From Macrostomum lignano (taxonomy: Eukaryota): 64,000 nucleotides of DNA. This document shows, piece by piece, positions 17,752 through 62,358 of this stretch (positions are counted from its first letter, which is position 1; every line of letters starts with the position of its first letter). The stretch spans positions 1 through 64,000 of the forward strand of contig NIVC01000612.1 in assembly GCA_002269645.1 (NCBI GenBank). Reading direction: 5' to 3'. Position numbers and translations under genes: made by a program. The notes under the pieces are model-generated. The model was not told the origin of the DNA. It was given only the letters and a program-made list of their open reading frames with translations, and ran no database searches.

Positions 17752-29522
<11,771 letters not shown>

Positions 29523-42645: not shown

Positions 42646-42809
42646 TTGTGGAAGGCTCTGAGACTGAAAGCCTCACAGCAGCTCACAGCCAGGCTGACCA
42701 ATGAGAATCCATGCGGTTGCTAAGCAGCTCAGAACTCTCTGCTGCAGTAGAAAAGCACACAGCGGGCCCCCAACCCCAGCAGCAGAAGACAGACAGACAG
42801 ACCAGCGCC

Positions 42810-45800
42810 ATGGACTCAAAGCAATCCGACCAGCCCCATACCGCGGCCCCGTCAGCAACTCCGCAGAGCCGGTTGCAGCAGGCCGCGGCAGAGGCGGTGG
42901 CCCGCAGCCGACTGCGCAGGCAGCTGATTGAGTTCACCAAGGAGACTTCGCTGCCAGGGGTGAGCCAGGCCGGTCTGAGCAGCGGCCGCGGCCTGGTGTG
43001 GACCGGCCTCCTCTCTCTGTCACTGGTGGCTCTCATCGTGCACCTGTGTATCATTGTGACCGTCTACCTGCGCTACAGCACCACCACCAGTTCGAGCTAC
43101 GACCAGCCGTTCCAGTGGCCGGATGTGACCCTGTGCAACCTGGTGCCGCTGTCGGTCAGCGCGGTGAACGAGCATCTGGCTGAAGCTCCGACTTCGCCAT
43201 CGAACAGTCTCGGCCGGTTCTTCGACGCTCTGCCAGCGCTGGCCGAGTCAATTTCGGCCGCCAACGGGCCGGACGTGACCAACTCGCAGAGTCTGCGCGA
43301 GCTGATGACGCGATCAAGGAACCTGACACCGGTTGAGCACAAGCTGGCAAACAGCCTGCTGAGCTGCAATTATCGAGGCGTCCAGTGTCCGACTGACTCC
43401 ATCAAGCAAACCTACGTGCCCCGGTTCCACACCTGCTTCACCGTGAGCATCGGATCGGCTGGCGGCAGCTCGGGCACCCTGGCTGATGACGACTTCCTAG
43501 ACATGATGCTGTTTGTTGAGAGCGGCGTGCTGAGCTACTGGGATCGGAGAACTCTCGCGGATTTCTCACCGGCTGGCAAAGTGTTTGTCCACGCTCGGGG
43601 CTCCTACCCGGATGTGGAGGACATCCTGGACTTGCCAACTGGAGCATGGGTGATGCTGGGCCTTCGCTACACTGAGAGACACAATTTCGAGGGCCGGTGC
43701 GCCAAGTACCAGGGCGAAGTGAAGTTTTCCACACCGTCTGGGGAGAAGCTCTTTACCTGTGAGCGGGGAGCAGGATCAGCTACCTTATTGGCTATTTTTT
43801 TTGTCAAGCGTGTCTTTTACGTTTCTGATGATTTTGCTGTATGCTTGCAGATTTCTGGTCTTTCCCTCTACCCCTCTTTCCCTCTACCCCTCTTTCCCTC
43901 TACCCCCTCTTTCCTTCTACCCCCTCTTTCCCTCTAACCCCTCTTTCCCTCTACCCCTCTTTCCCTCTACCCCTCTTTCCCTCTAACCCATCTTTCCTTC
44001 TAACACCTCTTTCCCTCTACCCCTCTTTCCCTCTACCCCTCTTTCCCTCTAACCCCTCTTTCCCTCTACCCCTCTTTCCCTCTACCCCTCTTTCCCTCTA
44101 CCCCTCCTTCCCTCTACCCCTCTTTCCATCTACCTCTCTTTCCCTCTACCCCTCTTTCCCTCTACCCCTCTTTCCCTCTAACCCCTCTTTCCCTCTACCC
44201 CTCTTTCCCTCTACCCCTCTTTCCCTCTACCCCCTCTTTCCCTCTACCCCTCTTTCCCTCTACCCCCTCTTTCCTTCTACCCCTTCTTTCCTTCTGCCCC
44301 CTCTTTCCTTCTACCCGTCTTTCCCTCCACTCATTCTTTTCCTCTAGTCCTCTTTCTCTCTTTCCTCAGCCAATGATTTTTACTAACAGATCGGCAAGGA
44401 TTTAGTGGGTGCCAGATTGGCAACAATAGCAGTGGTTAGTAAAAGATTCACAGAGTCTTACTTACCAAAATAACCTGGCCCGCTAACTGTTTTGTCGCAG
44501 TTAATTGAACACACAAAACCCTGCTACTTGAAACGGAATTGAAGTCTGTTTGCGTTAAGTGCCCAACTAAGGCCTGGACAAATATTGACACTACTACGAC
44601 GTATGCTGTTAGCTGCTAGCTGAGCCGAAATGTTATAATTATGAGACTTTATAGAGACGTGATACTGAATTATTTATACGAATCGATTGATACACAATTT
44701 GCTAAGGTTGCCGGTGCTTTAATTTTTACAAAACAGCCAGTGTTAAAAAACTGAAAAACAAGACTTCTTTGACTCAGCGAACGAGAGGCAAATTCGATTT
44801 GCAAATAGAAATTCCAATAAGAAAGTAAATGAAAATACAGTAGAAAGCGGGAGAGGGTGGGAGAGAGCGGGAGAGGGTGGGAGAGGGTGGGAGAGAGCGG
44901 GAGAGGGTGGGAGAGGGTGGGAGAGAGCGGGAGAGAGCGGGAGAGGGTGGGAGAGGGTGGGAGAGGGTGGGAGAGGGTTGGAGAGAGCGGGAGAGTGCGG
45001 GAGAGAGCGGGAGAGAGTGGGAGAGGGTGGGAGAGGATGGGAGAGGGTGGGAGAGAGCGGGAGAGAGCGGGAGAGAGCGGGAGAGGGTGGGAGAGAGCGG
45101 GAGAGAGCGGGAGAAAGCGGGAGAGAGCGGGAGAGAGCGGGAGAGAGCGGGAGAGAATGGGAGAGAGCGGGAGAGGGTGGGAGAGAGCGGGAGAGAGCGG
45201 GAGAAAGCGGGAGAGAGCGGGAGAGAGCGGGAGAGGGTGGGAGAGAGCGGGAGAGAGCGGGAGAGAGCGGGAGAGAGCGGGAGAGAATGGGAGAGAGCGG
45301 GAGAGGGTGGGAGAGAGCGGGAGAGAGCGGGAGAGAGCGGGAGAGGGTGGGAGAGAGCGGGAGAGAGCGGGAGAAAGCGGGAGAGAGCGGGAGAGAGCGG
45401 GAGAGAGCGGGAGAGAATGGGAGAGAGCGGGAGAGGGTGGGAGAGAGCGGGAGAGAGCGGGAGAAAGCGGGAGAGAGCGGGAGAGAGCGGGAGAGGGTGG
45501 GAGAGAGCGGGAGAGAGCGGGAGAGAGCGGGAGAGAGCGGGAGAGAGTGGGAGAGAGCGGGAGAGAGTGGGAGAGAGCGGGAGAGAGCGCGAGAGAGCGG
45601 AAGAGGGTGGGAGAGAGCGGGAGAGGGTGGGAGAGAGCGGGAGAGAGCGGGAGAAAGCGGGAGAGAGCGGGAGAGGGTGGGAGAGAGCGGGAGAGGGTGG
45701 GAGAGAGCGGGAGAGAGCGGGAGAGAACGGGAGAGGGTGGGAGAGAGCGGAAGAGAGCAGGAGAGAGCGGAAGAGGGTGGGAGAGAGCGGGAGAGAGCGG

Positions 45801-48507
45801 GAGAGAGCGGGAGAGAGCGGGAGAGAGCGGGAGAGAGCGGGAGAGAGCGGGAGAGAACGGGAGAGGGTGGGAGAGAGCGGGAGAGAGCAGGAGAGAGCGG
45901 GAGAGAGAGGGAGAGGGTGGGAGAGAGCGGGAGAGAGCGGGAGAGAGCGGGAGAGAGCGGGAGAGAGCGGGAGGGGGTATGAGAGGGTGGGAGAGAGCGA
46001 GAGAGAGCGGGAGAGAGTGGGAGAGGATGGGAGAGGGTGGGAGAGAGCGGAAGAGAGCGGGAGAGAGCGGGAGAGAGCAGGAGAGAGCGGGAGAGGGTGG
46101 GAGAGAGCGGGAGAGAGAGGGAGAGGGTGGGAGAGAGCGGGAGAGAGCGGGAGAGAGCGGGAGAGAATGGGAGAGAGCGGGAGAGAGCGGGAGGGGGTAT
46201 GAGAGGGTGGGAGAGAGCGAGAGAGAGCGGGAGAGAGTGGGAGAGGATGGGAGAGGGTGGGAGAGAGCGGAAGAGAGCGGGAGAGAGCGGGAGAGAGCAG
46301 GAGAGAGCGGGAGAGGGTGGGAGAGAGCGGGAGAGAGCGGGAGATAAAGGGAGAGTGTGGGAGAGAGCGGGAGAGAGGGCGAGAGGGCGAGAGATAAAGG
46401 GAGAGAGCGGGAGAGAGCGGGAGAGAGGGCGAGAGGGCGAGAGATAAAGGGAGAGTGTGGGAGAGGGTGGGAGAGAGGGCGAGAGGGCGAGAGATAAAGG
46501 CAGAGAGCGGGAGAGGGTGGGAGAGAGGGTGAGAGGGCGAGAGATAAAGGGAGAGATTGAAGAGTTTGCTTTAAACAGTCATAAAAGTTATAGTCCCCAT
46601 ATTGTCCTCTGGCTAATGGCTTTGGCGACTGAGGAAAACAATCGATAAAGGTGGGACCCGCAGTTGTGAGGCATTAAATGAGTTCTCGGGTCACAAAGCA
46701 CTCAGAATCTCTCAGTAATGTGCATTAATTAATTTGTGTTTGTACTCTTTTGCCAACGCATAGGACAAACGGGAAATTAAATAACTTGGTTAATCAAAGA
46801 ACATCAATTAGGAAGATTGATTTGAGGAAGCAGCACCATCTGCCGTTGGAGTGATGCAAATCCCAAATTCCGCCACAGAAATCAATGCCGCAATATTCTC
46901 GATACAATTTGTGCCTCGTAAAATGAAACTGGTATCGACGTCTCACTCCTTAAAGTCCTTCCAATACACCTTATACTGTTCCCCACATTCCACACAGCCG
47001 TTCCCACACCAAAGTCTCTAAATTTTAACTTTAGAAAGCTCACTGCATTGCACCTGCACTTAACCACCAACCAGTACCCAACACAATCAACCCCACATCC
47101 TCCAACCCACACCCCTCACCCCAAAACCTTGCTCCCCACACCCCGAACCCACACCCTCCACCCCACACCCTCTGACCCACACCCTCCAGGCCACCAATTC
47201 ACCCCTCAGCAACGACTCCCTGAACTCCCCGCCCGCAGCTCCATCCGACCGTCGCTCCTGCCTGGAGTCCAGCATCCAAGCCGAGCTTATCCGTCAGTGT
47301 GGCTGCATCAGCGAGAAGTTCCGCCGCTTCGATGCCCATCCTGGCCAGCCGGGCTGCCACTCGGTCGGCAACGCCTCGTCGGGGTCGGCCAGCACCGAGG
47401 ACCGCGCCAGGGCCGCCTGCCACGGCCGGGTGTTGCCGCAGGCGCTGGAGGCGGCCGGCACCGAGTGTCGAATCGACTGCCTCGAACGGGACTGGGCGAT
47501 ACGGGTGTCGCCGCACGTCTGGCCGAAGCTCGACGCCTCCGTAACGGCCCTGTTCGACGCTTACGCCGAACCGGCTGTGCGACTTCGAGGATTCGATCCC
47601 AGGCTCCTGCTGGTGCGCTGGACTCTGGCAGCATTGGAGTGCTGACGAACCCCATACTCTGAACACCATACTATGAACCCCACACTCTGAAACCCACACT
47701 CGGAACCCAATGCTCTGAACCCAATACTCTGAACCCCACACTCTGAACCCCATACAATTAACCAAAAACGTGAGCTGACATTCTTTTACACTGTAATCTA
47801 AACACTTCATTTCCCACACACCCATTCCCCACACCCCCTTCCCCACACCCCCATTCCCCACACACCCATTCCCCACACACCAATTTCCCACACCCTATTC
47901 CCCACACACCCCCATTCCACACACCCCATTCCACACACCCCATTCCCCACACCCCATTCCCCACACCCCATTCCCCACACCCCATTCCACACACCCCCAT
48001 TCCCCACACCCCCATTCCCCACACCCATTCCCCACACCCCCATTTCCCACACACCCATTCCACACACCCATTCCCCACACACCCATTCCCCACACCCCCA
48101 TTCCCCACACACCCATTCCCCACACACCCATTCCCCACACCCCCATTTCCCACACCCCCATTCCCCACACTACGATCTAATTCCCCACCCCACCACTTAA
48201 TCCCCAGGTGAACGGCACCACAAATGTGACCACCCTGGACGCCAAATCTCAGTTAGAATTTGTTCAGCGCAGTTTCCTACGCATCACGGTGAACCCAACA
48301 AGTACCATTGGGCTCCGTATTGATGAAAGCCTGGTTTACACTGCCGGAAACCTGCTCTCGGATCTGGGAGGAATCCTCGGCCTCTACCTGGGATTCAGCA
48401 TCGTGTTCATCTACGAGATCGCATTCCTGCTGGTGAAGCTGGTGCGCGACTCACGTGCTGGAGGCGGTGGCGCGGTCGGGACCGCCGATTCTAAGAGCTC
48501 CTGTTGA
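42810..48507 (+). CDS. DEG/ENaC (amiloride-sensitive sodium channel superfamily) subunit, ~540 aa; exons 42810-43758, 47239-47612, 48208-48507
   Basis: gccATGG start; TM1 (GLVWTGLLSLSLVALIVHLCIIV), post-TM1 WPDVTLCNLVP, thumb CLESSIQAELIRQCGC...ECRIDC, TM2 LLSDLGGILGLYLGFSIVFIYE. Junctions T|gtgagc..cgcag|CT and CTG|gtgcgc..cccag|GTG give 1623 open nt. An alternative exon 2 acceptor at 47190 is possible. Confidence 0.9.
43858..44370. repeat. 16-bp pyrimidine minisatellite (TTTCCCTCTACCCCTC)n
   Basis: Period 43861 to 43877 to 43893. Confidence 0.93.
44845..46555. repeat. 10-bp purine-rich minisatellite (GGGAGAGAGC)n, 1.7 kb
   Basis: Direct periodicity; explains the ERERAGESGR ORFs. Confidence 0.97.
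47650..47755. repeat. Short degenerate repeat (TCTGAACCCCATAC-like)
   Basis: About 6 units at the start of ENaC intron 2. Confidence 0.75.
47808..48170. repeat. C-rich 14-15-bp minisatellite (CCCCACACCCCCATT)n
   Basis: Direct periodicity up to the exon 3 acceptor region. Confidence 0.9.
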
Positions 48508-48561: not shown

Positions 48562-51500
48562 TTGAATATTTTCTATTTTTACCTCTTCTAATTGCATAAT
48601 ACTCTGCTATCTTAATACTGTCTTAAGAAACCGCCCCAAACACTTTGAGAATCTGCCCTAAACCGTCCCTGAGCCACCATGAGAACCGTCCCTGAACCAC
48701 CATGAGAATCGTCCCTGAACCACCATGAGAATCGTCCCTGAACCACCATGAGAATCGTCCCTGAACCACCATGAGAACCGTCCCTGAACCACCATGAGAA
48801 TCGTCCCTGAACCACCATGAGAATCGTCCCTGAACCATGAGAATCGTCCCTGAACCATGAGAATCGTCCCTGAACCACCATGAGAATCGTCACTGAACCA
48901 CCATGAGAATCGTCCCTGAACCACCATGAGAATCGTCCCTGAACCATGAGAATCGTCCCTAAACCACCATGAGAATCGTCCCTAAACCACCATGAGAATC
49001 GTCACTGAACCACCATGAGAATCGTCACTGAACCACCATGAGAATCGTCCCTGAAACACCATGAGAATCGTCCCTGAACCACCATGAGAATCGTCCCTGA
49101 AACACCATGAGAATCGTCCCTAAACCATGAGAATCGTCCCTGAAACACCATGAGAATCGTCCCTGAACCACCATGAGAATCGTCCCTAAACCATGAGAAT
49201 CGTCCCTAAACCACCATGAGAATCGTCCCTAAACCATGAGAATCGTCCCTAAACCATGAGAATCGTCCCTAAACCATGAGAATCGTCACTGAACCACCAT
49301 GAGAATCGTCACTGAACCACCATGAGAATCGTCCCTGAACCACCATGAGAATCGTCCCTGAACCACCATGAGAATCGTCCCTAAACCATGAGAATCGTCC
49401 CTGAATCACCATGAGAATCGTCCCTGAACCACCATGAGAATCGTCCCTGAACCACCATGAGAATCGTCCCTGAACCATGAGAATCGTCCCTAAACCATGA
49501 GAATCGTCCCTAAACCATGAGAATCGTCCCTAAACCATGAGAATCGTCCCTAAACCATGAGAATCGTCACTGAACCACCATGAGAATCGTCCCTGAACCA
49601 CCATGAGAATCGTCCCTGAACCACCATGAGAATCGTCCCTGAACCATGAGAATCGTCCCTAAACCACCATGAGAATCGTCACTGAACCACCATGAGAATC
49701 CTCACTGAACCACCATGAGAATCGTCCCTGAACCATGAGAATCGTCCCTGAACCACCATGAGAATCGTCCCTGAATCATCATGAGAATCGTCCCTGAACC
49801 ACCATGAGAATCGTCCCTGAACCACCATGAGAATCGTCCCTGAACCATGAGAATCGTCCCTGAACCACCATGAGAATCGTCCCTGAACCACCATGAGAAT
49901 CGTCCCTGAACCATGAGAATCGTCCCTGAACCACCATGAGAATCGTCCCTGAACCACCATGAGAATCGTCCCTGAACCATGAGAATCGTCCCTAAACCAT
50001 GAGAATCGTCCCTAAACCATGAGAATCTTCCCTGAACCATTGAATATTTTCTATTTTTACCTCTTCTAATTGCATAATACTCTGCTATCTTAATACTGTC
50101 TTAAGAAACCGCCCCAAACTCTTTGAGAATCTGCCCTAAACCCCCATGAAAATCGTCCCTGAATCATCATGAGAATCGTCCCTGAACCACCATGAGAATC
50201 GTCCCTAAACCACCATGAGAATCGTCCGTAAACCACCATGAGAACCGTCCATAAACCATGAGAATCGTCCCTGAACCACCATGAGAATCGTCCCTGAACC
50301 ACCATGAGAATCGTCCCTGAACCACCATGAGAATCGTCCCTGAACCACCATGAGAATCGTCCCTGAACCACCATGAGAATCGTCCCTAAACCACCATGAG
50401 AACCGTCCATAAACCATGAGAATCGTCCCTGAACCACCATGAGAATCGTCCCTGAACCACCATGAGAATCGTCCCTGAACCACCATGAGAATCGTCCCTG
50501 AACCACCATGAGAATCGTCCCTGAACCACCATGAGAACCGTCCCTGAACCACCATGAGAATCGTCCCTGAATCACCATGAGAATCGTCCCTGAATCATCA
50601 TGAGAATCGTCCCTGAACCACCATGAGAATCGTCACTGAACCACCATGAGAATCGTCCCTGAACCACCATGAGAATCGTCCCTGAACCATGAGAATCGTC
50701 CCTGAACCACCATGAGAATCGTCCCTGAACCACCATGAGAATCGTCCCTGAATCATCATGAGAATCGTCCCTGAACCACCATGAGAACCGTCCCTGAACC
50801 ATGAGAATCGTCCCTGAACCATGAGAATCGTCCCTGAACCACCATGAGAATCGTCCCTGAAACACCATGAGAATCGTCCCTGAACCATGAGAATCGTCCC
50901 TGAACCATGAGAATCGTCCCTGAACCACCATGAGAATCGTCACTGAACCACCATGAGAATCGTCCCTGAACCACCATGAGAATCGTCCCTGAACCATGAG
51001 AATCGTCCCTAAACCACCATGAGAATCGTCCCTAAACTACCATGAGAATCGTCACTGAACCACCATGAGAATCGTCACTGAACCACCATGAGAATCGTCC
51101 CTGAAACACCATGAGAATCGTCCCTGAACCACCATGAGAATCGTCCCTGAAACACCATGAGAATCGTCCCTAAACCATGAGAATCGTCCCTGAAACACCA
51201 TGAGAATCGTCCCTGAACCACCATGAGAATCGTCCCTAAACCATGAGAATCGTCCCTAAACCACCATGAGAATCGTCCCTAAACCATGAGAATCGTCCCT
51301 AAACCATGAGAATCGTCCCTAAACCATGAGAATCGTCACTGAACCACCATGAGAATCGTCACGGAACCACCATGAGAATCGTCCCTGAACCACCATGAGA
51401 ATCGTCCCTGAACCACCATGAGAATCGTCCCTAAACCATGAGAATCGTCCCTGAAACACCATGAGAATCGTCCCTGAACCACCATGAGAATCGTCCCTAA

Positions 51501-54500
51501 ACCATGAGAATCGTCCCTAAACCACAATGAGAATCGTCCCTAAACCATGAGAATCGTCCCTAAACCATGAGAATCGTCACTGAACCACCATGAGAATCGT
51601 CACTGAACCACCATGAGAATCGTCCCTGAACCACCATGAGAATCGTCCCTGAACCACCATGAGAATCGTCCCTGAACCATGAGAATCGTCCCTAAACCAC
51701 CATGAGAATCGTCACTGAACCACCATGAGAATCCTCACTGAACCACCATGAGAATCGTCCCTGAACCATGAGAATCGTCCCTGAACCACCATGAGAATCG
51801 TCCCTGAATCATCATGAGAATCGTCCCTGAACCACCATGAGAATCGTCCCTGAACCACCATGAGAATCGTCCCTGAACCATGAGAATCGTCCCTGAACCA
51901 CCATGAGAATCGTCCCTGAACCATGAGAATCGTCCCTGAATCACCATGAGAATCGTCCCTGAACCACCATGAGAATCGTCCCTGAACCACCATGAGAATC
52001 GTCCCTGAACCATGAGAATCGTCCCTAAACCATGAGAATCGTCCCTAAACCATGAGAATCGTCCCTAAACCATGAGAATCGTCCCTAAACCATGAGAATC
52101 GTCACTGAACCACCATGAGAATCGTCCCTGAACCACCATGAGAATCGTCCCTGAACCACCATGAGAATCGTCCCTGAACCATGAGAATCGTCCCTAAACC
52201 ACCATGAGAATCGTCACTGAACCACCATGAGAATCCTCACTGAACCACCATGAGAATCGTCCCTGAACCATGAGAATCGTCCCTGAACCACCATGAGAAT
52301 CGTCCCTGAATCATCATGAGAATCGTCCCTGAACCACCATGAGAATCGTCCCTGAACCACCATGAGAATCGTCCCTGAACCATGAGAATCGTCCCTGAAC
52401 CACCATGAGAATCGTCCCTGAACCACCATGAGAATCGTCCCTGAACCATGAGAATCGTCCCTGAACCACCATGAGAATCGTCCCTGAACCACCATGAGAA
52501 TCGTCCCTGAACCATGAGAATCGTCCCTAAACCATGAGAATCGTCCCTAAACCATGAGAATCTTCCCTGAACCATTGAATATTTTCTATTTTTACCTCTT
52601 CTAATTGCATAATACTCTGCTATCTTAATACTGTCTTAAGAAACCGCCCCAAACTCTTTGAGAATCTGCCCTAAACCCCCATGAAAATCGTCCCTGAATC
52701 ATCATGAGAATCGTCCCTGAACCACCATGAGAATCGTCCCTAAACCACCATGAGAATCGTCCGTAAACCACCATGAGAACCGTCCATAAACCATGAGAAT
52801 CGTCCCTGAACCACCATGAGAATCGTCCCTGAACCACCATGAGAATCGTCCCTGAACCACCATGAGAATCGTCCCTGAACCACCATGAGAATCGTCCCTG
52901 AACCACCATGAGAATCGTCCCTAAACCACCATGAGAACCGTCCATAAACCATGAGAATCGTCCCTGAACCACCATGAGAATCGTCCCTGAACCACCATGA
53001 GAATCGTCCCTGAACCACCATGAGAATCGTCCCTGAACCACCATGAGAATCGTCCCTGAACCACCATGAGAACCGTCCCTGAACCACCATGAGAATCGTC
53101 CCTGAATCACCATGAGAATCGTCCCTGAATCATCATGAGAATCGTCCCTGAACCACCATGAGAATCGTCACTGAACCACCATGAGAATCGTCCCTGAACC
53201 ACCATGAGAATCGTCCCTGAACCATGAGAATCGTCCCTGAACCACCATGAGAATCGTCCCTGAACCACCATGAGAATCGTCCCTGAATCATCATGAGAAT
53301 CGTCCCTGAACCACCATGAGAACCGTCCCTGAACCATGAGAATCGTCCCTGAACCATGAGAATCGTCCCTGAACCACCATGAGAATCGTCCCTGAAACAC
53401 CATGAGAATCGTCCCTGAACCATGAGAATCGTCCCTGAACCATGAGAATCGTCCCTGAACCACCATGAGAATCGTCACTGAACCACCATGAGAATCGTCC
53501 CTGAACCACCATGAGAATCGTCCCTGAACCATGAGAATCGTCCCTAAACCACCATGAGAATCGTCCCTAAACTACCATGAGAATCGTCACTGAACCACCA
53601 TGAGAATCGTCACTGAACCACCATGAGAATCGTCCCTGAAACACCATGAGAATCGTCCCTGAACCACCATGAGAATCGTCCCTGAAACACCATGAGAATC
53701 GTCCCTAAACCATGAGAATCGTCCCTGAAACACCATGAGAATCGTCCCTGAACCACCATGAGAATCGTCCCTAAACCATGAGAATCGTCCCTAAACCACC
53801 ATGAGAATCGTCCCTAAACCATGAGAATCGTCCCTAAACCATGAGAATCGTCCCTAAACCATGAGAATCGTCACTGAACCACCATGAGAATCGTCACGGA
53901 ACCACCATGAGAATCGTCCCTGAACCACCATGAGAATCGTCCCTGAACCACCATGAGAATCGTCCCTAAACCATGAGAATCGTCCCTGAAACACCATGAG
54001 AATCGTCCCTGAACCACCATGAGAATCGTCCCTAAACCATGAGAATCGTCCCTAAACCACCATGAGAATCGTCCCTAAACCATGAGAATCGTCCCTAAAC
54101 CATGAGAATCGTCACTGAACCACCATGAGAATCGTCACTGAACCACCATGAGAATCGTCCCTGAACCACCATGAGAATCGTCCCTGAACCACCATGAGAA
54201 TCGTCCCTGAACCATGAGAATCGTCCCTAAACCACCATGAGAATCGTCACTGAACCACCATGAGAATCCTCACTGAACCACCATGAGAATCGTCCCTGAA
54301 CCATGAGAATCGTCCCTGAACCACCATGAGAATCGTCCCTGAATCATCATGAGAATCGTCCCTGAACCACCATGAGAATCGTCCCTGAACCACCATGAGA
54401 ATCGTCCCTGAACCATGAGAATCGTCCCTGAACCACCATGAGAATCGTCCCTGAACCATGAGAATCGTCCCTGAATCATCATGAGAATCGTCCCTGAACC

Positions 54501-57500
54501 ACCATGAGAATCGTCCCTGAACCACCATGAGAATCGTCCCTGAACCATGAGAATCGTCCCTAAACCATGAGAATCGTCCCTAAACCATGAGAATCTTCCC
54601 TGAACCATTGAATATTTTCTATTTTTACCTCTTCTAATTGCATAATACTCTGCTATCTTAATACTGTCTTAAGAAACCGCCCCAAACTCTTTGAGAATCT
54701 GCCCTAAACCCCCATGAAAATCGTCCCTGAACCACCATGAGAATCGTCCCTGAACCACCATGAGAATCGTCCCTGAACCACCATGAGAATCGTCCCTGAA
54801 CCATGAGAATCGTCCCTAAACCACCATGAGAATCGTCCCTAAACCACCATGAGAATCGTCACTGAACCACCATGAGAATCGTCACTGAACCACCATGAGA
54901 ATCGTCCCTGAACCACCATGAGAATCGTCACTGAACCACCATGAGAATCGTCCCTAAACCACCATGAGAATCGTCCCTAAACCACCATGAGAATCGTCCC
55001 TGAACCACCATGAGAATCGTCCCTGAACCACCATGAGAATCGTCCCTGAACCACCATGAGAATCGTCCCTGAACCATGAGAATCGTCCCTAAACCACCAT
55101 GAGAATCGTCACTGAACCACCATGAGAATCCTCACTGAACCACCATGAGAATCGTCCCTGAACCATGAGAATCGTCCCTGAACCACCATGAGAATCGTCC
55201 CTGAATCATCATGAGAATCGTCCCTGAACCACCATGAGAATCGTCCCTGAACCACCATGAGAATCGTCCCTGAACCATGAGAATCGTCCCTGAACCACCA
55301 TGAGAATCGTCCCTGAACCACCATGAGAATCGTCCCTGAACCATGAGAATCGTCCCTGAACCACCATGAGAATCGTCCCTGAACCACCATGAGAATCGTC
55401 CCTGAACCATGAGAATCGTCCCTAAACCATGAGAATCGTCCCTAAACCATGAGAATCTTCCCTGAACCATTGAATATTTTCTATTTTTACCTCTTCTAAT
55501 TGCATAATACTCTGCTATCTTAATACTGTCTTAAGAAACCGCCCCAAACTCTTTGAGAATCTGCCCTAAACCCCCATGAAAATCGTCCCTGAACCACCAT
55601 GAGAATCGTCCCTGAACCACCATGAGAATCGTCCCTGAACCACCATGAGAATCGTCCCTGAACCATGAGAATCGTCCCTAAACCACCATGAGAATCGTCC
55701 CTGAACCACCATGAGAATCGTCCCTAAACCATGAGAATCGTCCCTAAACCACCATGAGAATCGTCCCTAAACCATGAGAATCGTCCCTAAACCATGAGAA
55801 TCGTCCCTAAACCATGAGAATCGTCCCTAAACCATGAGAATCGTCACTGAACCACCATGAGAATCGTCCCTGAACCACCATGAGAATCGTCCCTGAACCA
55901 CCATGAGAATCGTCCCTGAACCATGAGAATCGTCCCTAAACCACCATGAGAATCGTCACTGAACCACCATGAGAATCCTCACTGAACCACCATGAGAATC
56001 GTCCCTGAACCATGAGAATCGTCCCTGAACCACCATGAGAATCGTCCCTGAATCATCATGAGAATCGTCCCTGAACCACCATGAGAATCGTCCCTGAACC
56101 ACCATGAGAATCGTCCCTGAACCATGAGAATCGTCCCTGAACCACCATGAGAATCGTCCCTGAACCACCATGAGAATCGTCCCTGAACCATGAGAATCGT
56201 CCCTGAACCACCATGAGAATCGTCCCTGAACCACCATGAGAATCGTCCCTGAACCATGAGAATCGTCCCTAAACCATGAGAATCGTCCCTAAACCATGAG
56301 AATCTTCCCTGAACCATTGAATATTTTCTATTTTTACCTCTTCTAATTGCATAATACTCTGCTATCTTAATACTGTCTTAAGAAACCGCCCCAAACTCTT
56401 TGAGAATCTGCCCTAAACCCCCATGAAAATCGTCCCTGAATCATCATGAGAATCGTCCCTGAACCACCATGAGAATCGTCCCTAAACCACCATGAGAATC
56501 GTCCGTAAACCACCATGAGAACCGTCCATAAACCATGAGAATCGTCCCTGAACCACCATGAGAATCGTCCCTGAACCACCATGAGAATCGTCCCTGAACC
56601 ACCATGAGAATCGTCCCTGAACCACCATGAGAATCGTCCCTGAACCACCATGAGAACCGTCCCTGAACCACCATGAGAATCGTCCCTGAATCACCATGAG
56701 AATCGTCCCTGAATCATCATGAGAATCGTCCCTGAACCACCATGAGAATCGTCACTGAACCACCATGAGAATCGTCCCTGAACCACCATGAGAATCGTCC
56801 CTGAACCATGAGAATCGTCCCTGAACCACCATGAGAATCGTCCCTGAACCACCATGAGAATCGTCCCTGAATCATCATGAGAATCGTCCCTGAACCACCA
56901 TGAGAACCGTCCCTGAACCATGAGAATCGTCCCTGAACCATGAGAATCGTCCCTGAACCACCATGAGAATCGTCCCTGAAACACCATGAGAATCGTCCCT
57001 GAACCATGAGAATCGTCCCTGAACCATGAGAATCGTCCCTGAACCACCATGAGAATCGTCACTGAACCACCATGAGAATCGTCCCTGAACCACCATGAGA
57101 ATCGTCCCTGAACCATGAGAATCGTCCCTAAACCACCATGAGAATCGTCCCTAAACTACCATGAGAATCGTCACTGAACCACCATGAGAATCGTCACTGA
57201 ACCACCATGAGAATCGTCCCTGAAACACCATGAGAATCGTCCCTGAACCACCATGAGAATCGTCCCTGAAACACCATGAGAATCGTCCCTAAACCATGAG
57301 AATCGTCCCTGAAACACCATGAGAATCGTCCCTGAACCACCATGAGAATCGTCCCTAAACCATGAGAATCGTCCCTGAAACACCATGAGAATCGTCCCTG
57401 AACCATGAGAATCGTCCCTGAACCACCATGAGAATCGTCCCTGAACCACCATGAGAATCGTCCCTAAACCACCATGAGAATCGTCCCTAAACCACCATGA

Positions 57501-57925
57501 GAACCGTCCATAAACCATGAGAATCGTCCCTGAACCACCATGAGAATCGTCCCTGAAACACCATGAGAATCGTCCCTGAACCACCATGAGAATCGTCCCT
57601 GAAACACCATGAGAATCGTCCCTGAACCACCATGAGAATCGTCCCTGAACCACCATGAGAATCGTCCCTAAACCATGAGAATCGTCCCTGAAACACCATG
57701 AGAATCGTCCCTGAACCACCATGAGAATCGTCCCTAAACCATGAGAATCGTCCCTAAACCACCATGAGAATCGTCCCTGAACCACCATGAGAATCGTCCC
57801 TGAACCATGAGAATCGTCCCTGAACCATGAGAATCGTCCCTGAACCACCATGAGAATCGTCCCTGAACCACCATGAGAATCGTCCCTGAACCACAATGAA
57901 GATCATCTCTGAGCCACCATGAGAA
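48562..57925. repeat. 9.3-kb satellite of 18/21-bp units (CCATGAGAATCGTCCCTGAA[CCA])n with six copies of a 103-bp non-satellite segment
   Basis: Segment starts at 48562, 50040, 52575, 54608, 55470, 56317; identical spurious ORFs recur at fixed offsets (50090..50578 = 52625..53113). Confidence 0.98.
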
Positions 57926-58279
57926 TCCCCTTTGAAAACATTATGAAGCACAACACTGAAAATGAACTGAATGTACTACTGCACATGAAAATCTAGTAGC
58001 TGGTGATGCATATTTTGTTTTAGAATAGATTAGATGCGGCAACGAAAACTGCTTTTACTGCTTTTACTTACTTGACTTTTGCGCACTAAAAATAGTGCAG
58101 GGCTCTCTCTCGAGCAGGGAGTTAATAAATCTTCAAGTCAGGAGCAAAGAAGACTTATATGCAAATTTAGCCCTTGATCACACCTTGCTGGGAGACTTAT
58201 AAAGTCAAGATTGATCGCAGACTAAGATGAAAAAAAAGTTATTGTCAAAAGACGCTCGTAATTCGAACATCCTGCAATC

Positions 58280-58592: not shown

Positions 58593-58761
58593 ATCTGTCC
58601 CTTCCTTCGCAATGTTTGGATTTAAATTTCTCTGTGGCCATTGGCTAGCTAGAGCAGGGAGGCTGAGGCGGTCGGGTCCGATCTCCATCAAAATAGATAC
58701 AAGACATCTAGACAGGAGCTCGCGAACGCGCCTTCATCGCTCATTTTCACCCAAGTCACAT

Positions 58762-58845
58762 ATCAATCAATCGATCAATCAATCAATCAATCAATCGATC
58801 GATCGATCAATCAATCAATCGATCAATCAGTCAATCAGTCAATCA
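58762..58845. repeat. (ATCA/ATCG)n microsatellite directly before the GPCR ATG
   Basis: Tetranucleotide run. Confidence 0.9.
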
Positions 58846-61800
58846 ATGGACGAGAAACTCCCGGACAGCGAGCGGCACCTCAGACTGGGCCTGCTGATTC
58901 TTTACGGCCTCGTTGGCGCGGTGGCCATCGCAGCCAATGCCGGTCTGGGGCTCGCCATCTGGCTCAGCCGCCTAGACCGTCAGCGGCCGAGGACGCAGGC
59001 TCTGCTAGCCAACCTCTGCCTGTGCGACCTCTGCATCAGCGCCGTCGTCCTGCCGGTCACCGCGTTGAGCTTCGCCGATCTGCGCTGGCACCTGGGCGCG
59101 GTACTCTGCCCGCTGGTCCAGTTCGCCAGCTGCTCCGTGATGTTCGCCTCGGTGTTCACCTTGGCCTCGGCCAGCCTGGTTGAAGGATTCGGGTTGGGAG
59201 ACAGTTTTGCCGCAGCAGCTGCGGCTGCAGGAACCAGCGGAGGCGGCAGCGTCGGCAATAGCAGCGGAGTCGAAGGCGGGGCTAGCAGCGGAGACGGGGG
59301 TTCCAGCAGATGGCATCGGTTTTGGAGCTCACGAGGGTGCGTGCGATGGTTTTTACCTGTTAGATAGGGGTGTCCAGGTGTGTACCTGTTAGATAGGGGT
59401 GTCCGGGTGTGTTACCTGTTGGATAAAGGTGTCCGGTGTGTTACCTGTTAGAAAAAGGTGTCCGGGTGTGTTACCTGTTAGAGGTGTCCGAGGGTGCTAC
59501 ATGTATCATGTTAGACAGATTGTGTAACCTATGAGACAATAGTCCCTGTACAATATCTCTCTGTAAAAGCTTAGCAGAAATCATTAACCAACGAATTTCA
59601 TTCGCAGTTTTGCCGGCATAAAATGGATCGCCTGTCTGTGGCTTCTGTCCGGGCTTTTTGCCGCCCCTAATGCGGTTAATTACCGAATCGAGTTTTGCAA
59701 CGACAGGTGTGTGTTTTAAGACACTTATAAATATGCAGCAACAGGCACGGCCCAAATGGAGTCCGGGGAGTGGGGTGGCTGTCCAAATGAAGCCCGGGGA
59801 GTGGGGTGGTTGTCCAACTGATGCCCGGGGAGTGGGGTGGTTGTCCAACTGACGCTCGATGAGTGGGCTGGCTGTCCAACTGATGCCCGGGGAGTGGGGT
59901 GGTTGTCCAACTGACGCTCGAGGAGTGGGCTGGCTGTCCAACTGATGCCCGGGGAGTGGGGTGGTTTTCCAACATACTTAAAGTGTCTCCCCCTGGTTAG
60001 TCTTATCCGCCTCAGAGCTACAATGGGCTTCTTTAGTCCTTTTTGAAATCCCTTCTTGATCAAGCAGAGTTTATTTATAGAAACAGAAGATGCAGAGGCA
60101 GCATGACTTTGATACTGCTTCTCGAGTTTCAAAGGAGAACTGAGAAAGGGAGTAAGTGAGAACAATGAAAAACAAATTAAAGTGAATCTGAGCCAGCTTA
60201 GTCGGGAAATTACGAGCTAAATCAGGATTTCTTCTGTATCGACTTCGAAAATTGACAAAAAAGGAATATTTTCTTAAACAAGTAGTCGGTGTCTAAATCA
60301 AGGGGATTTAGACTTAATCTTTACCTTTCCCTATCGGATCTACTCCCTCTATCGTTTAGCCGCTCCTTCTATCACTTATCCGCTCCCTCCATCACTTATC
60401 CACTTCCTCCATCACTTAGCCGCTCCCTCCATCACTTATCCACTCCCTCCATCACTTAGCCGCTCCCTCCATCACTTATCCGCTCCCTCCATCACTTATC
60501 CACTCCCTCCATCACTTATCCGCTCCCTCCATCACTTAGCCGCTCCCTCCATCACTTTTCCGCTCCCTCCATCACTTATCTACTCCCTCCATCACTTATC
60601 CGCTCCCTCCATCACTTAGCCGCTCCCTCCATCACTTAGCCGCTCCCTCCATCACTTATCCACTCCCTCCATCACTTATCCGCTCCCTCCATCACTTAGC
60701 CGCTCCCTCCATTACTTATCCGCTCCCTCAATCACTTATCCACTCCCTCCATCACTTAGCCGCTCCCTCCATCACTTATCCACTCCCTCCATCACTTATC
60801 CGCTCCCTCAATCACTTATCCACTCCCTCCATCACTTATCCGCTCCTTCCATCACTTATCCACTCCCTCCATCACTTATCCACTCTCTCCATCACTTATC
60901 CACTCTCTCCATCACTTATCCACTCTCTCCATCACTTATCCACTCTCTCCATCACTTATCCACTCTCTCCATCACTTATCCACTCCCTCCATCACTTATC
61001 CACTCCCTCCATCACTTATCCACTCCCTCCATCACTTATCCGCTCCCTCCATCACTTATCCACTCCCTCCATCACTTATCCACTCCCTCCATCACTTATC
61101 CACTCCCTCCATCACTTATCCACTCCCTCCATCACTTAGCCGCTCCCTCCATCACTTATCCACTCCCTCCATCACTTATCCGCTCCCTCCATCACTTATC
61201 CACTCCCTCCATCACTTATCCACTCCCTCCATCACTTATCCACTCCCTCCATCACTTATCCACTCCCTCCATCACTTAGCCGCTCCCTCCATCACTTATC
61301 CACTCCCTCCATCACTTATCCGCTCCCTCCATCACTTATCCACTCCCTCCATCACTTATCCACTCCCTCCATCACTTATCCACTCCCTCCATCACTTATC
61401 TACTCTCTCCATCACTTATCCGCTTAAACTGAAGCCTCAGTCACTGCAACTCGAGCTTAACCTGAAGCCCCAGTCACTGCAACTCCCGCTTAACCTGAAG
61501 CCCCAGTCACTGCAACTCCCGTTTAACCTGAAGCCCCAGTCACTGCAACTCCCGCTTAACCTGAAGCCTCAGTGACCGCAAATCCCGTCTCTTCCCTTCT
61601 CTTCTCTTCCCCTGTCCAGCAACCCGCACGCCACCTACGAGCTGACGCCCGCTGAAGAGTCGCAGAGCTGCCAGCTGTGCTCCGAGAGCTGGAGCCGCAG
61701 TCTCCGCCTGCTCGGCCTGCAGGCCAACCGCAGCAACGAAGACGCCGCTCGAAGCGGCTACGCCTCCCTAACTGCCGTCTGCCTGCTGCTGCTGCCCACA

Positions 61801-62358
61801 CTGGCCATCGGCGCCGCTCACTGCCGGATCTACCAGCGCCTGTCGGGTCTGGTGCACCGACGCCAGACCGAACTGCGGCTTCAACTGCTTCGCGGCGACC
61901 CCACGGCCGACACGGCTGCTGCAGCGGAATCGGCGGTCGATTTCCGGATGCGACGGGCTCGATGCATCTACCGCGCGTCAGTTGTCATGGTGCTGGTGTT
62001 CGTCCTGTTCTGGGCGCCGCTGCACCTGTACAACCTGTTCGCCGACACCCTGATGAACCAGCTGATCAAGCTGAACACCAGCCTGGAGTTCTTTATCGTT
62101 GCTAAGAATGTCTACCAGGTGTTCATGTGTCTGGCACTCACTAATTCGGCCGCTAATCCATTCTTTCTATTTGCCATGCATTCCGTCTATCGGAGGTCGC
62201 TAGTTCGAATCTGCTGCCGCTGTCTACGTAATGGAAGAGACGCGGCTGTTGATAGCAATTGCGAGGAAGTAATCAACAATGACACCGCGGATGCGGATGC
62301 AGAGCTGCTGCCGCTGCGTCCGATTGAGACTGGGTCGGCCGGGAGGGGATCCGAGTAA
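58846..62358 (+). CDS. Class A (rhodopsin-like) GPCR, neuropeptide-receptor-like, 442 aa; exons 58846-59336, 59608-59706, 61620-62358
   Basis: TM1 N1.50 (AIAANAGL), TM2 LANLCLCDL, ECL1 WHLGAVLC, TM4 LWLLSGLFAAP in a 99-nt phase 2-2 exon absent from the ORF track, ECL2 CSESW, TM5 LLPTL, TM6 FVLFWAPLHLY, TM7 TNSAANPF; 1329 nt open. Confidence 0.9.
59353..59492. repeat. ~29-30-bp minisatellite (GTGTTACCTGTTAGATAGGGGTGTCCGG), 5 copies
   Basis: In GPCR intron 1. Confidence 0.85.
59760..59972. repeat. 31-bp G-rich minisatellite (GATGCCCGGGGAGTGGGGTGGTTGTCCAACT) with an alternating variant, ~7 copies
   Basis: In GPCR intron 2. Confidence 0.88.
60345..61424. repeat. 20-bp minisatellite (CCACTCCCTCCATCACTTAT)n, ~54 copies
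   Basis: Direct periodicity. Confidence 0.97.
61423..61585. repeat. 33-bp minisatellite (CTTAACCTGAAGCCCCAGTCACTGCAACTCCCG), 5 copies
   Basis: Period 61423 to 61456; ends just before the exon 3 pyrimidine tract. Confidence 0.9.

What the first reader, a model, noticed from the sequence alone, without database searches (positions are those of the whole stretch)
58846..62358. Class A GPCR lacking all three intracellular activation switches (R3.50, Y5.58, Y7.53)
Seen: counting from C3.25, the DRY position reads V-E-G (no Arg in SASLVEGF). Counting from P5.50, position 5.58 is His (AAHCRIY). NPxxY reads NPFFL. N1.50, D2.50, the ECL1 W..G..C, W4.50, the ECL2 Cys, P5.50, W6.48/P6.50 and N7.49/P7.50 are all retained and the ORF is intact. 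Established: R3.50, Y5.58 and Y7.53 form the conserved network for G-protein activation, and atypical receptors such as ACKRs alter these motifs. Inference: a folded, ligand-binding but G-protein-uncoupled (decoy, scavenger or arrestin-biased) neuropeptide-type receptor, possibly an undescribed invertebrate atypical receptor.
Basis: partly seen in the sequence, partly recalled or inferred. Interest (0 to 1): 0.75.

Follow-up and report, generated by a model that had tools for sequence, protein, structure and literature searches.

The report
Flatworm receptor missing three activation switches
An intact gene in the flatworm Macrostomum lignano, with no matching protein in the libraries searched, encodes a peptide-receptor-like membrane receptor that lacks three residues normally needed to switch on G proteins; an old sister gene lacks them too, so this looks like a working unusual receptor rather than a broken one.

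Summary
A three-exon gene (58846-59336, 59608-59706, 61620-62358, + strand, all GT-AG) encodes an intact 442-aa class A GPCR. It reads V-E-G at 3.49-3.51, His at 5.58 and NPFFL in TM7. It keeps N1.50, D2.50, S3.39, the C3.25/ECL2 cysteines, W4.50, P5.50, F6.44, W6.48/P6.50, N7.45/S7.46 and N7.49/P7.50.

No alternative exon or splice restores DRY.

The window is Macrostomum lignano. A library of 1.84 billion protein representatives holds one close relative, M. lignano A0A1I8IT42, a paralog about 41-45% identical. It carries Q-H-G, H5.58 and NPIFL. It also shares GFGL (3.51-3.54), AHCRIYQ, RIYRxS (6.32-6.37), NPxFLFxxHSxYRR and an A/G-rich insertion in ICL2.

Among 142 nearest other relatives, R3.50 is present in 139, and none lacks even two of the three residues.

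The cytoplasmic face is therefore remodelled and conserved, not decayed. The closest known family is the QRFP/NPY-type peptide receptors; orthology is not established.

Loss of G-protein coupling, and a decoy or arrestin-biased role, remain plausible inferences, not shown. Non-canonical G-protein coupling and an unexpressed gene are live rivals.

Verdict: a new variant of a known kind, moderately interesting.

The parts
58846..59336 (+). Exon 1: start codon, a short N-terminus of about 8 residues, TM1, TM2, TM3 and most of ICL2
   Evidence: Translation. The donor is GG|gtgcgtg at 59336/59337. tblastn hits from about 100 class A relatives all end at about 59178, just before VEG.
59179..59196 (+). 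Codons for V112-E113-G114-F115-G116-L117 (3.49-3.54). This is VEG in place of D/E-R-Y, followed by the family-specific GFGL.
   Evidence: The paralog reads Q-H-G-F-G-L. Human QRFPR reads E-R-H-Q-G-L at the same columns.
59209..59307 (+). In-frame Ala/Gly/Ser-rich low-complexity insertion in ICL2 (A122-S154), made of degenerate GCN/GGN/AGC triplets
   Evidence: The AF2 model has pLDDT below 50 at 137-147 and no secondary structure at 130-154. The paralog has a shorter A/G-rich insertion at the same place. It cannot be removed by any canonical intron (direct reading).
59337..59607 (+). Intron 1 (271 nt, GT-AG), containing a 29-bp minisatellite
59608..59706 (+). Exon 2 (99 nt): TM4 with W175 (4.50) and the start of ECL2
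   Evidence: It aligns to the paralog's TM4.
59707..61619 (+). Intron 2 (1913 nt, GT-AG, strong polypyrimidine tract), mostly 31-, 20- and 33-bp minisatellites
61620..62358 (+). Exon 3: ECL2 (conserved SCxLCxExWxRSLxLLGLQ), TM5, ICL3, TM6, TM7, helix 8, the CCRC cysteines, an acidic C-tail and the stop codon
61819..61821 (+). Codon CAC = H264 at position 5.58, within the conserved AHCRIYQ
   Evidence: Y in 124/142 relatives, H in 7. The paralog also has H.
61966..61980 (+). Codons I313-Y314-R315-A316-S317 (6.33-6.37): derived Y6.34 and S6.37 at the cytoplasmic end of TM6, shared with the paralog
   Evidence: The other relatives have A/T/V/I/S at 6.34 and L/V/I at 6.37.
62011..62019 (+). W328-A329-P330 (W6.48, P6.50): the toggle-switch motif is retained
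62155..62169 (+). N376-P377-F-F-L380: NPxxL in place of NPxxY
   Evidence: The paralog reads NPIFL.

Best explanation
SHOWN. This is a real, intact, three-exon gene of Macrostomum lignano, with no match in the protein libraries searched. It encodes a class A, peptide-receptor-like 7TM protein.

Together with one old paralog (UniProt A0A1I8IT42), it forms a small clade known so far only from Macrostomum. The common ancestor of the two had most likely already replaced the D/E-R-Y arginine, Y5.58 and Y7.53, and had opened ICL2 with a flexible Ala/Gly-rich insertion.

The ligand side and the middle of the activation pathway are kept:
- the C3.25-ECL2 disulfide cysteines;
- a strongly conserved ECL2 with a predicted beta-hairpin;
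- the Na+-pocket residues D2.50, S3.39, N7.45, S7.46 and N7.49;
- the P5.50/V3.40/F6.44 triad and W6.48-x-P.

The cytoplasmic face is rebuilt into a different but conserved surface: GFGL at 3.51-3.54, AHCRIYQ at 5.57-5.63, A6.30, Y6.34, S6.37, and NPxFLFxxHSxYRR.

INFERRED. The receptor still binds an extracellular ligand, probably a peptide, and still undergoes a ligand-driven rearrangement. It cannot make the R3.50 contact with the G-alpha C-terminal helix or the Y5.58-water-Y7.53 lock. Canonical heterotrimeric G-protein activation is therefore most likely lost or strongly weakened. Its output, or its regulatory role, would then go through the conserved alternative cytoplasmic surface. It would be an 'atypical' 7TM receptor: arrestin- or scaffold-coupled, ligand-sequestering, or a modulator of another receptor.
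For: - Gene model and intact ORF. Exon GC is 0.51-0.66 against intron GC of 0.45-0.50, and GC3 is 0.73.
- 7tm_1 domain match, E 1.2e-23.
- Confident 7TM model and peptide-receptor fold matches.
- Species: an M. lignano UniProt MATE fragment maps to the window at 98-99% identity over two exons.
- Single close relative P0001, E 7e-54, from M. lignano.
- Shared atypical residues and derived motifs.
- Rarity of the combination: 0 of 141 other relatives lack even two of the three residues.
- No hidden DRY exon or splice.
- No relaxation of the cytoplasmic face: 54% identity there against 44% in the extracellular halves and 41.5% overall.
- Role of R3.50, Y5.58, Y7.53 and ICL2 in G-protein coupling: review PMC12624438.
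- Precedent for natural 7TM receptors that recruit arrestin without activating G proteins (D6R/ACKR2, C5aR2): PMC7612807.
Against: - There is no expression or cDNA evidence. No protein or ORF fragment from this locus exists in the searched collections, which include some transcriptome-derived assemblies.
- Constraint is judged from a single paralog, taken from a chimeric, N-terminally truncated gene model. No orthologs from other species were found, and dN/dS could not be computed.
- A conserved cytoplasmic surface is equally what one would expect if the receptor still binds a G protein in a non-canonical way.
- From my own knowledge, 7TM families without DRY or NPxxY, such as T2R taste receptors and many nematode chemoreceptors, do signal through G proteins.
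- The C-tail has only 5 Ser/Thr in 42 residues and no cluster, so classical phosphorylation-dependent arrestin binding is not obviously encoded.
- Residues 3.49-3.50 differ between the paralogs (VE against QH), so no specific replacement chemistry is conserved at 3.50.
Confidence: 0.5

Rival explanations
1. The receptor is functional and still signals through heterotrimeric G proteins, using a lineage-specific, non-canonical interface. The conserved R5.60, Y5.62, Y6.34, R6.35 and helix-8 YRR would substitute for the lost TM3/TM7 residues.
For: - The cytoplasmic halves and helix 8 are the best conserved parts between the two paralogs, with conserved Arg and Tyr residues relocated to TM5 and TM6.
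- The Na+ pocket, the PIF-like triad and CWxP are intact, as expected for a receptor that still transmits an activation signal.
- From my own knowledge, T2Rs and nematode chemoreceptors couple to G proteins without DRY or NPxxY.
Against: - Within class A, R3.50 was present in 139 of the 142 nearest relatives, and it directly contacts the G-alpha C-terminal helix (PMC12624438).
- ICL2 also loses the conserved proline (S/A at 3.57, where 31/42 relatives have P).
- ICL2 is interrupted by a 17-33 residue flexible insertion.
- Several coupling determinants are therefore gone at once.
Confidence: 0.28
2. The window copy is a non-functional or unexpressed relic: a young pseudogene or silent duplicate whose ORF has not yet been disrupted. 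Only the paralog, or neither gene, would be functional.
For: - No predicted protein or ORF fragment from this locus appears in any searched collection.
- The locus is embedded in minisatellite-rich DNA.
- A triplet-repeat-like stretch has expanded in ICL2.
- 3.46 is Ala, where the 42 relatives have I/M/L/V.
Against: - The ORF of 442 codons is uninterrupted across three exons, with canonical splice sites and a good polypyrimidine tract.
- All structural class A hallmarks and the family-specific motifs are intact.
- The atypical residues are ancestral to the duplication, not recent damage.
- The exons have coding-like GC3 of 0.73, against intron GC of 0.45-0.50.
Confidence: 0.17
3. Gene-model or assembly artefact. 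The true transcript would splice out or replace the VEG and low-complexity region and carry a normal DRY.
For: - Many peptide-receptor genes have an intron near the DRY codon (my own knowledge).
- A GT follows the Leu111 codon (CTG|GTTGAAGG).
Against: - No in-frame AG acceptor exists for that donor. The two out-of-frame acceptors run into a stop in the TM4 exon (direct reading; frames).
- No DRY-like exon lies anywhere in 59150-61640.
- The residues right after position 3.50 (GFGL) are conserved at the protein level in the paralog, and G-L also aligns with human QRFPR. This sequence is therefore coding.
Confidence: 0.03

Closest known systems
QRFP (26RFa) receptor / extended NPY-receptor family of class A peptide receptors (QRFPR, NPY2R, PrRPR; also ETB, BB3, galanin, apelin, RXFP3/4)
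   Same: - Best sequence matches. A two-sequence family profile hits human QRFPR at E 1.1e-21, about 15 bits ahead of ETB and NPY2R. The top non-family library hit is annotated 'QRFP-like peptide receptor'.
- Same fold, with target-normalised TM-scores of 0.75-0.87.
- Predicted ECL2 beta-hairpin, H6.52, G3.53-L3.54, an ICL2 '..F...(K/R)W' frame, and a helix 8 followed by Cys residues.
   Different: - Only about 17-23% identical.
- QRFPR has E-R-H, Y5.58 and NPIVY where this protein has V-E-G, H and NPFFL.
- This protein has a 33-residue low-complexity insertion in ICL2 and a very short N-terminus.
- Orthology to any one peptide-receptor family is not established.
Arrestin-coupled / atypical 7TM receptors (ACKR1-4, GPR182, C5aR2)
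   Same: These are class A receptors with an intact ligand-binding fold and altered DRY-region motifs, and they do not activate G proteins (PMC7612807; PMC10405735 listed).
   Different: - There is no specific sequence relationship: none is among the best 60 solved-structure matches.
- They are vertebrate chemokine or complement receptors.
- From my own knowledge, most of them keep Y5.58 and Y7.53, and several keep R3.50.
- Here the whole cytoplasmic layer is changed, and no function has been measured.
PROF1 / Srfb and other flatworm-specific rhodopsin orphan groups (Rho-L, Rho-R, Srfa/c, fwRhods)
   Same: These are flatworm-restricted, highly diverged class A orphans with modified classical motifs (PMC3261222, PMC4862687, PMC6114109).
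   Different: - PROF1 genes are intronless. They keep D-[R/K/S]-x, lack W6.48, and have N-[F/G/I] instead of N-P in TM7 (Table 3 of PMC3261222). This gene has two introns, lacks R3.50, and keeps W6.48 and N-P.
- Planarian rhodopsin-like families keep (D/E)R(Y/F).
- fwRhods keep the TM3 and TM7 motifs, and none passing the filters was found in turbellarians.
T2R taste receptors and nematode chemoreceptor families (my own knowledge, not tested here)
   Same: These are 7TM receptors that lack DRY and NPxxY-type Tyr residues, which shows such receptors can be functional.
   Different: They are unrelated in sequence, form large tandem expansions and signal through G proteins. This clade has only two known members, no tandem copy within 64 kb, and clear peptide-receptor ancestry.

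Membership tests
Class A (rhodopsin-like) GPCR, Pfam PF00001 7tm_1 | Significant match to the 7tm_1 profile, above the gathering score | tested here: met
   E 1.2e-23, 84.4 bits against a cut-off of 30.5
Class A (rhodopsin-like) GPCR, Pfam PF00001 7tm_1 | Seven-helix fold with helix 8, superposable on solved class A receptors | tested here: met
   AF2 pLDDT 82.9, pTM 0.83, seven long helices plus H385-400. Foldseek E about 1e-11, target-normalised TM-score 0.75-0.87, to OX1R, APJ, QRFPR, GAL1 and NPY2R.
Class A (rhodopsin-like) GPCR, Pfam PF00001 7tm_1 | Reference residues N1.50, D2.50, C3.25 with the ECL2 Cys, W4.50, P5.50, W6.48/P6.50, N7.49/P7.50 | tested here: met
   N31, D61, C88/C217, W175, P256, W328/P330 and N376/P377
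Class A (rhodopsin-like) GPCR, Pfam PF00001 7tm_1 | D/E-R-Y at 3.49-3.51, Y5.58, and the Y of NPxxY | tested here: not met
   V-E-G, H and L here; Q-H-G, H and L in the paralog. These are hallmark motifs, not strict membership criteria. The protein is still a class A member by profile and fold.
QRFP-receptor / NPY-receptor-type peptide receptors | Orthology: a clearly best or reciprocal match to one receptor family | tested here: inconclusive
   The profile hits QRFPR at E 1e-21 against 5e-17 for the next family. The top library hit is 'QRFP-like' at E 3e-12, followed closely by galanin-, GPR54- and RYamide-like receptors. No phylogeny was made.
QRFP-receptor / NPY-receptor-type peptide receptors | Activation by an RFamide/RYamide-type peptide | not testable with these tools
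   Needs a ligand assay
PROF1 (platyhelminth rhodopsin orphan family 1) | Intronless gene | tested here: not met
   Two GT-AG introns. PROF1 is described as exclusively intronless.
PROF1 (platyhelminth rhodopsin orphan family 1) | Motifs: TM3 D[R/K/S]x; TM6 lacking W (S/A/T/I at 6.48); TM7 N[F/G/I]..[Y/F/M/L] | tested here: not met
   Here the motifs are VEG, F...W.P and NP..L, against Table 3 of PMC3261222.
Atypical / arrestin-coupled 7TM receptors (ACKRs, C5aR2) | Ligand binding without G-protein activation; arrestin recruitment or scavenging | not testable with these tools
   This is a functional definition (PMC7612807) and needs cell assays.
Atypical / arrestin-coupled 7TM receptors (ACKRs, C5aR2) | Sequence kinship with the chemokine/complement receptor branch | tested here: not met
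   No ACKR or C5aR2 is among the best 60 solved-structure matches in either search. Only a weak CXCR2 hit was seen.
Opsins | Retinal-binding Lys at 7.43 | tested here: not met
   Leu at 7.43 in both paralogs

The most novel reading that the evidence does not exclude
The two Macrostomum genes define a class A lineage that has evolved a new, selectively maintained intracellular coupling surface. It comprises GFGL after TM3 with a long flexible ICL2, HCRIYQ on TM5, IYRxS on TM6 and NPxFLFxxHSxYRR. The surface would serve a transducer that is neither a canonically docked G protein nor a phosphorylation-dependent arrestin. That would be a previously unseen output mode for a peptide-receptor scaffold.
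Probability: 0.1. Interest if true: 0.8.

Novelty: new variant of a known kind. Interest (0 to 1): 0.5.

Why it matters
Natural class A receptors that keep the ligand pocket, the Na+ site and the toggle switch, but have replaced R3.50, Y5.58 and Y7.53 all at once, are rare. The known examples of G-protein-silent receptors are vertebrate immune receptors.

A conserved invertebrate example would have two uses. It would offer an independent natural experiment on which parts of the activation network are needed for which output. It would also raise the possibility that atypical receptors extend to invertebrate peptide signalling.

M. lignano has established genetic tools (in situ hybridisation, RNAi and transgenesis; my own knowledge), so the question is directly testable.

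A practical point also follows. The protein libraries searched hold no product of this locus, and the UniProt model of its paralog is fused to transposon-derived sequence. Surveys that filter on DRY or NPxxY can exclude such receptors; one survey did exclude sequences lacking the ubiquitous rhodopsin motifs (PMC6114109).

Tried and rejected
1. **Hidden DRY exon or alternative splice.** I translated all three + frames of 59100-59720 and searched 59150-61640 for [DE]R[YFWHCL]. Three matches turned up, none in an exon-compatible context. The donor after Leu111 has no in-frame acceptor. Rejected.

2. **'SRW' (residues 154-156) as a DRY displaced by a 42-residue in-frame insertion.** This was attractive because deleting the stretch would put S-R-W exactly at 3.49-3.51. 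I rejected it for three reasons. GFGL directly after position 3.50 is conserved in the paralog, and G-L aligns with QRFPR. The RW aligns with the ICL2 'KW' of QRFPR and the 'NW' of the paralog. R155 lies only 20 residues before W4.50, instead of about 25-27.

3. **PROF1 or planarian Rho/Srf membership.** The motifs and the intron content do not fit.

4. **Opsin.** There is no K7.43.

5. **Word-index homology searches.** The full protein gave nothing. The trimmed two-sequence profile gave only three distant receptors: two annotated gastrin-releasing peptide receptor and one unnamed. It did not even return the paralog, so these negatives are weak.

6. **Exact look-ups.** The 442-aa protein is not in the collection, and no encoding contig is on record for the paralog. 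The paralog's gene structure and dN/dS could therefore not be obtained.

7. **Metagenome scan with the family motifs AHCRIYQ and VFV[LV][FC]WAP.** There were 113 pattern matches, and none encodes a relative.

8. **A fast MAFFT alignment of all 156 sequences.** It misaligned the DRY and NPxxY columns. I replaced it with anchor-based counting.

9. **Upstream ATG at 58612 as the start.** The 78-residue extension is Arg-rich, and part of it is a translated (ATCA)n microsatellite. It is an unlikely extracellular N-terminus, but this is not disproved.
Full report
**1. What is in the sequence**

The + strand between 58846 and 62358 carries a three-exon gene: 58846-59336, 59608-59706 and 61620-62358. 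Both introns are GT-AG, and the second acceptor has a long polypyrimidine tract. The spliced CDS is 1329 nt and 442 codons, with no internal stop.

The exons are GC-rich (0.66, 0.51, 0.61; GC3 0.73). The introns have GC of 0.45-0.50 and are largely minisatellites.

The product matches Pfam 7tm_1 at E 1.2e-23, 84 bits against a 30.5-bit cut-off.

An AlphaFold2 model built on a 44-sequence alignment is confident (mean pLDDT 82.9, pTM 0.83). It has seven long helices, an ECL2 beta-hairpin (189-194 and 214-219) and helix 8 (385-400). Only ICL2 residues 137-147 and the last 27 residues fall below pLDDT 50. Foldseek places it among peptide receptors (OX1R, apelin, ETB, QRFPR, GAL1, NPY2R) with E about 1e-11 and target-normalised TM-scores of 0.75-0.87.

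**2. Check of the observation**

- *Counting from anchors.* C88 (3.25) gives V112-E113-G114 as 3.49-3.51. P256 (5.50) gives H264 as 5.58. P377 (7.50) gives L380 as 7.53.
- *Alignment with 42 nearest non-family relatives.* The E113 column is Arg in 42/42, the V112 column is Asp/Glu in 36/42, the G114 column is Tyr/Phe in 37/42, and the H264 and L380 columns are each Tyr in 37/42.
- *HMMER alignments to solved receptors.* Human QRFPR aligns E-R-H-Q-G-L with V-E-G-F-G-L, Y5.58 with His, and NPIVY with NPFFL.

So are S3.39, V3.40, F6.44, N7.45 and S7.46, which means the Na+ pocket and the PIF-like triad are intact.

I then counted by anchor in the 142 best library relatives that have C3.25, P5.50 and P7.50. 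R3.50 is present in 139, Y5.58 in 124 and Y7.53 in 130. Apart from the paralog described below, none lacks two or three. The triple absence is real and rare.

**3. Could a different gene model restore DRY?**

No. There is no [DE]R[YFWHCL] in an exon-like context in any + frame between 59150 and 61640.

The only GT right after Leu111 (CTG|GTTGAAGG) has no in-frame AG acceptor. The two out-of-frame acceptors (..TTCCAG|CAG|ATGG) run into a stop in the TM4 exon.

I also considered that S154-R155-W156 might be a DRY displaced by an in-frame insertion. The paralog and QRFPR alignments show instead that G-F-G-L directly continues TM3, and that the R-W belongs to the ICL2/TM4 junction.

**4. Organism and relatives**

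A MATE-transporter ORF elsewhere in the window (9371-10213, - strand) matches a Macrostomum lignano UniProt fragment at 100%. That fragment maps back to two window exons at 98-99% identity. The window is therefore M. lignano, a free-living flatworm.

A HMMER scan of 1.84 billion representative proteins found 395 hits at E<=1e-3, but only one below 1e-30. This is P0001 = UniProt A0A1I8IT42 of M. lignano, at E 7e-54. Its identity to the window protein is 40% by BLASTP, 41.5% over residues 25-400 in a global alignment, and 45% with the low-complexity regions removed. Since both genes are from the same species, it is an old paralog, not an ortholog.

P0001 is an N-terminally truncated, 747-aa chimeric model. 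Its C-terminal part carries a segment (LTDSLEQQV[D/N]AAHAGLLRAAF) that also appears in an unrelated M. lignano model, so it is presumably transposon-derived.

Nothing more than 44% identical to the window protein exists in the library, and the exact sequence is not in the 15-billion-protein collection. The libraries searched therefore hold no product of this gene.

The next hits are much weaker, starting at E 3e-12. They are annotated as QRFP-like, galanin-like, GPR54-like and RYamide-like receptors. A two-sequence family profile hits human QRFPR best, at E 1.1e-21, about 15 bits ahead of ETB and NPY2R. QRFPR belongs to the extended NPY-receptor family (PMC5818035).

**5. The paralog carries the same peculiarities**

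| Feature | Window protein | P0001 |
|---|---|---|
| 3.49-3.54 | V-E-G-F-G-L | Q-H-G-F-G-L |
| TM5 (5.57-5.63) | AHCRIYQ | AHCRIYQ |
| TM6 cytoplasmic end (6.30-6.37) | A-R-C-I-Y-R-A-S | A-K-R-I-Y-R-L-S |
| TM7 / helix 8 | NPFFLFAMHSVYRR | NPIFLFCTHSAYRR |

Both proteins also differ from the 42 relatives in three further ways:
- They lack the ICL2 proline: S/A at 3.57, where 31/42 relatives have Pro.
- They have Ala at 6.30, where most relatives have Lys or Arg.
- They carry an Ala/Gly-rich insertion at the same point of ICL2: 33 residues here (A122-S154), and about 17 in P0001.

ECL2 is usually variable, but here it is strikingly conserved: SCxLCxExWxRSLxLLGLQ, with three conserved cysteines.

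By region, the cytoplasmic halves of the helices plus helix 8 are 54% identical (58/108). The extracellular halves are 44% identical (47/107), and the overall figure is 41.5%. The difference is not statistically significant, but it does show that the cytoplasmic face has not relaxed.

The parsimonious reading is that G3.51, H5.58 and L7.53, and probably the loss of R3.50, predate the duplication. The remodelled face has been maintained since then. This speaks against simple decay at the family level. It is still a qualitative argument: dN/dS could not be computed, because no DNA of the paralog or of any ortholog was obtainable.

**6. How it most likely works**

*Established.* R3.50 contacts the C-terminal helix of G-alpha. 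Y5.58 and Y7.53 form the water-mediated lock that stabilises the open, active cytoplasmic cavity. ICL2 contributes to the interface (PMC12624438).

*Shown here.* All of these elements are replaced, while the ligand side and the mid-membrane switches are kept.

*Inferred.* The receptor still binds a ligand, probably a peptide, and still changes conformation. Canonical G-protein activation is lost or much reduced. The conserved new cytoplasmic surface serves another partner or a regulatory role.

Precedent exists in D6R/ACKR2 and C5aR2, which recruit arrestins without measurable G-protein activation (PMC7612807).

I put this reading at about 0.5. The main rival, at about 0.28, is non-canonical G-protein coupling. 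The conserved cytoplasmic face and the relocated Arg/Tyr residues on TM5 and TM6 are equally compatible with that. From my own knowledge, receptor families without DRY or NPxxY can signal through G proteins.

A silent or unexpressed copy is at about 0.17. It cannot be excluded for the window gene, because there is no transcript evidence. A gene-model artefact is unlikely, at about 0.03.

Specific support for arrestin bias is weak. The C-tail is acidic but has only five Ser/Thr, and no cluster.

**7. Comparison with what is known**

- *By sequence and fold*, this is a class A receptor nearest to the QRFP/NPY-type peptide receptors. Orthology to one family is not established.
- *It is not PROF1.* PROF1 genes are intronless, keep D-[R/K/S]-x, lack W6.48 and have N-F/G in TM7 (PMC3261222).
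- *Planarian rhodopsin-like families* keep (D/E)R(Y/F) (PMC4862687).
- *Fasciola-type fwRhods* keep the TM3 and TM7 motifs, and none passing the filters was found in turbellarians (PMC6114109).
- *Lophotrochozoan lineage-specific expansions* keep DRY and NPxxY (PMC11886862).
- *It is not an opsin*, having L7.43.
- *It works like an atypical receptor only by analogy.* It is not related to the ACKR or C5aR2 branch.

**8. Verdict**

The protein is folded and intact, it is peptide-receptor-like, it is undescribed as far as the searched libraries and the papers read go, and it is not a decaying family. Whether it is uncoupled from G proteins, and whether it is a decoy or arrestin-biased, is open.

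I rate it a new variant of a known kind, with interest 0.5.

Noticed in passing
window 5058-7110 and 8268-12015, - strand: Two tandem copies of a MATE (SLC47-like) multidrug/toxin extrusion transporter gene (Pfam MatE). The second copy matches an M. lignano UniProt fragment at 98-99%, which identifies the species. The two copies are about 85% identical over the 91 residues compared (P0157 matches the first copy at 84.6%, against 99% for the second).
   Followed up: partly
window 15900-16562, - strand: A 220-aa ORF with a CLAMP / flagellar C1a-32 domain (Pfam PF14769, E 1.5e-36), probably a ciliary central-apparatus protein gene.
   Followed up: partly
window 17752-18450 (-) and 42711-43937 (+): A PDZ-domain exon (Pfam PDZ_6, E 8e-6) and a 408-aa first exon of an amiloride-sensitive sodium channel (ASC/DEG-ENaC, E 2e-17).
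   Followed up: partly
whole window, e.g. 48664-57927, 30083-34298, 26883-28829, 44842-46556, 60343-61424: At least half of the 64 kb is tandem minisatellite or microsatellite DNA. Examples are a 9.3-kb array of a 23/46-bp unit, a 4.2-kb array of a 16-mer, and many 1-2 kb arrays of 10-30 bp units. Many of them create long spurious ORFs on both strands. Intron 2 of the receptor gene is mostly a 1.08-kb 20-mer array.
   Followed up: partly
window 58612-58848: An (ATCA)n microsatellite (58762-58847) abuts the receptor's ATG. It is in frame with an upstream ATG at 58612, so it would read (INQS)n, that is, repeated N-x-S sequons. The upstream extension is Arg-rich and unlikely to be a real extracellular N-terminus. 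The true 5' end, and a possible trans-splice acceptor at ..aatcag|tcaatcaATG, are unverified.
   Followed up: no
P0001 residues ~380-470 and P0156 residues ~15-55 (M. lignano UniProt models): Two unrelated M. lignano gene models, one a GPCR and one a MATE transporter, carry the same segment LTDSLEQQV[D/N]AAHAGLLRAAF... This is presumably transposon-derived sequence fused into the predictions, so these public models are chimeric.
   Followed up: no
window 59209-59307: The ICL2 insertion is a degenerate GCN/GGN/AGC triplet run, so it looks like a coding triplet-repeat expansion. Its length differs between the two paralogs (33 against about 17 residues), which suggests it may be length-polymorphic.
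   Followed up: no
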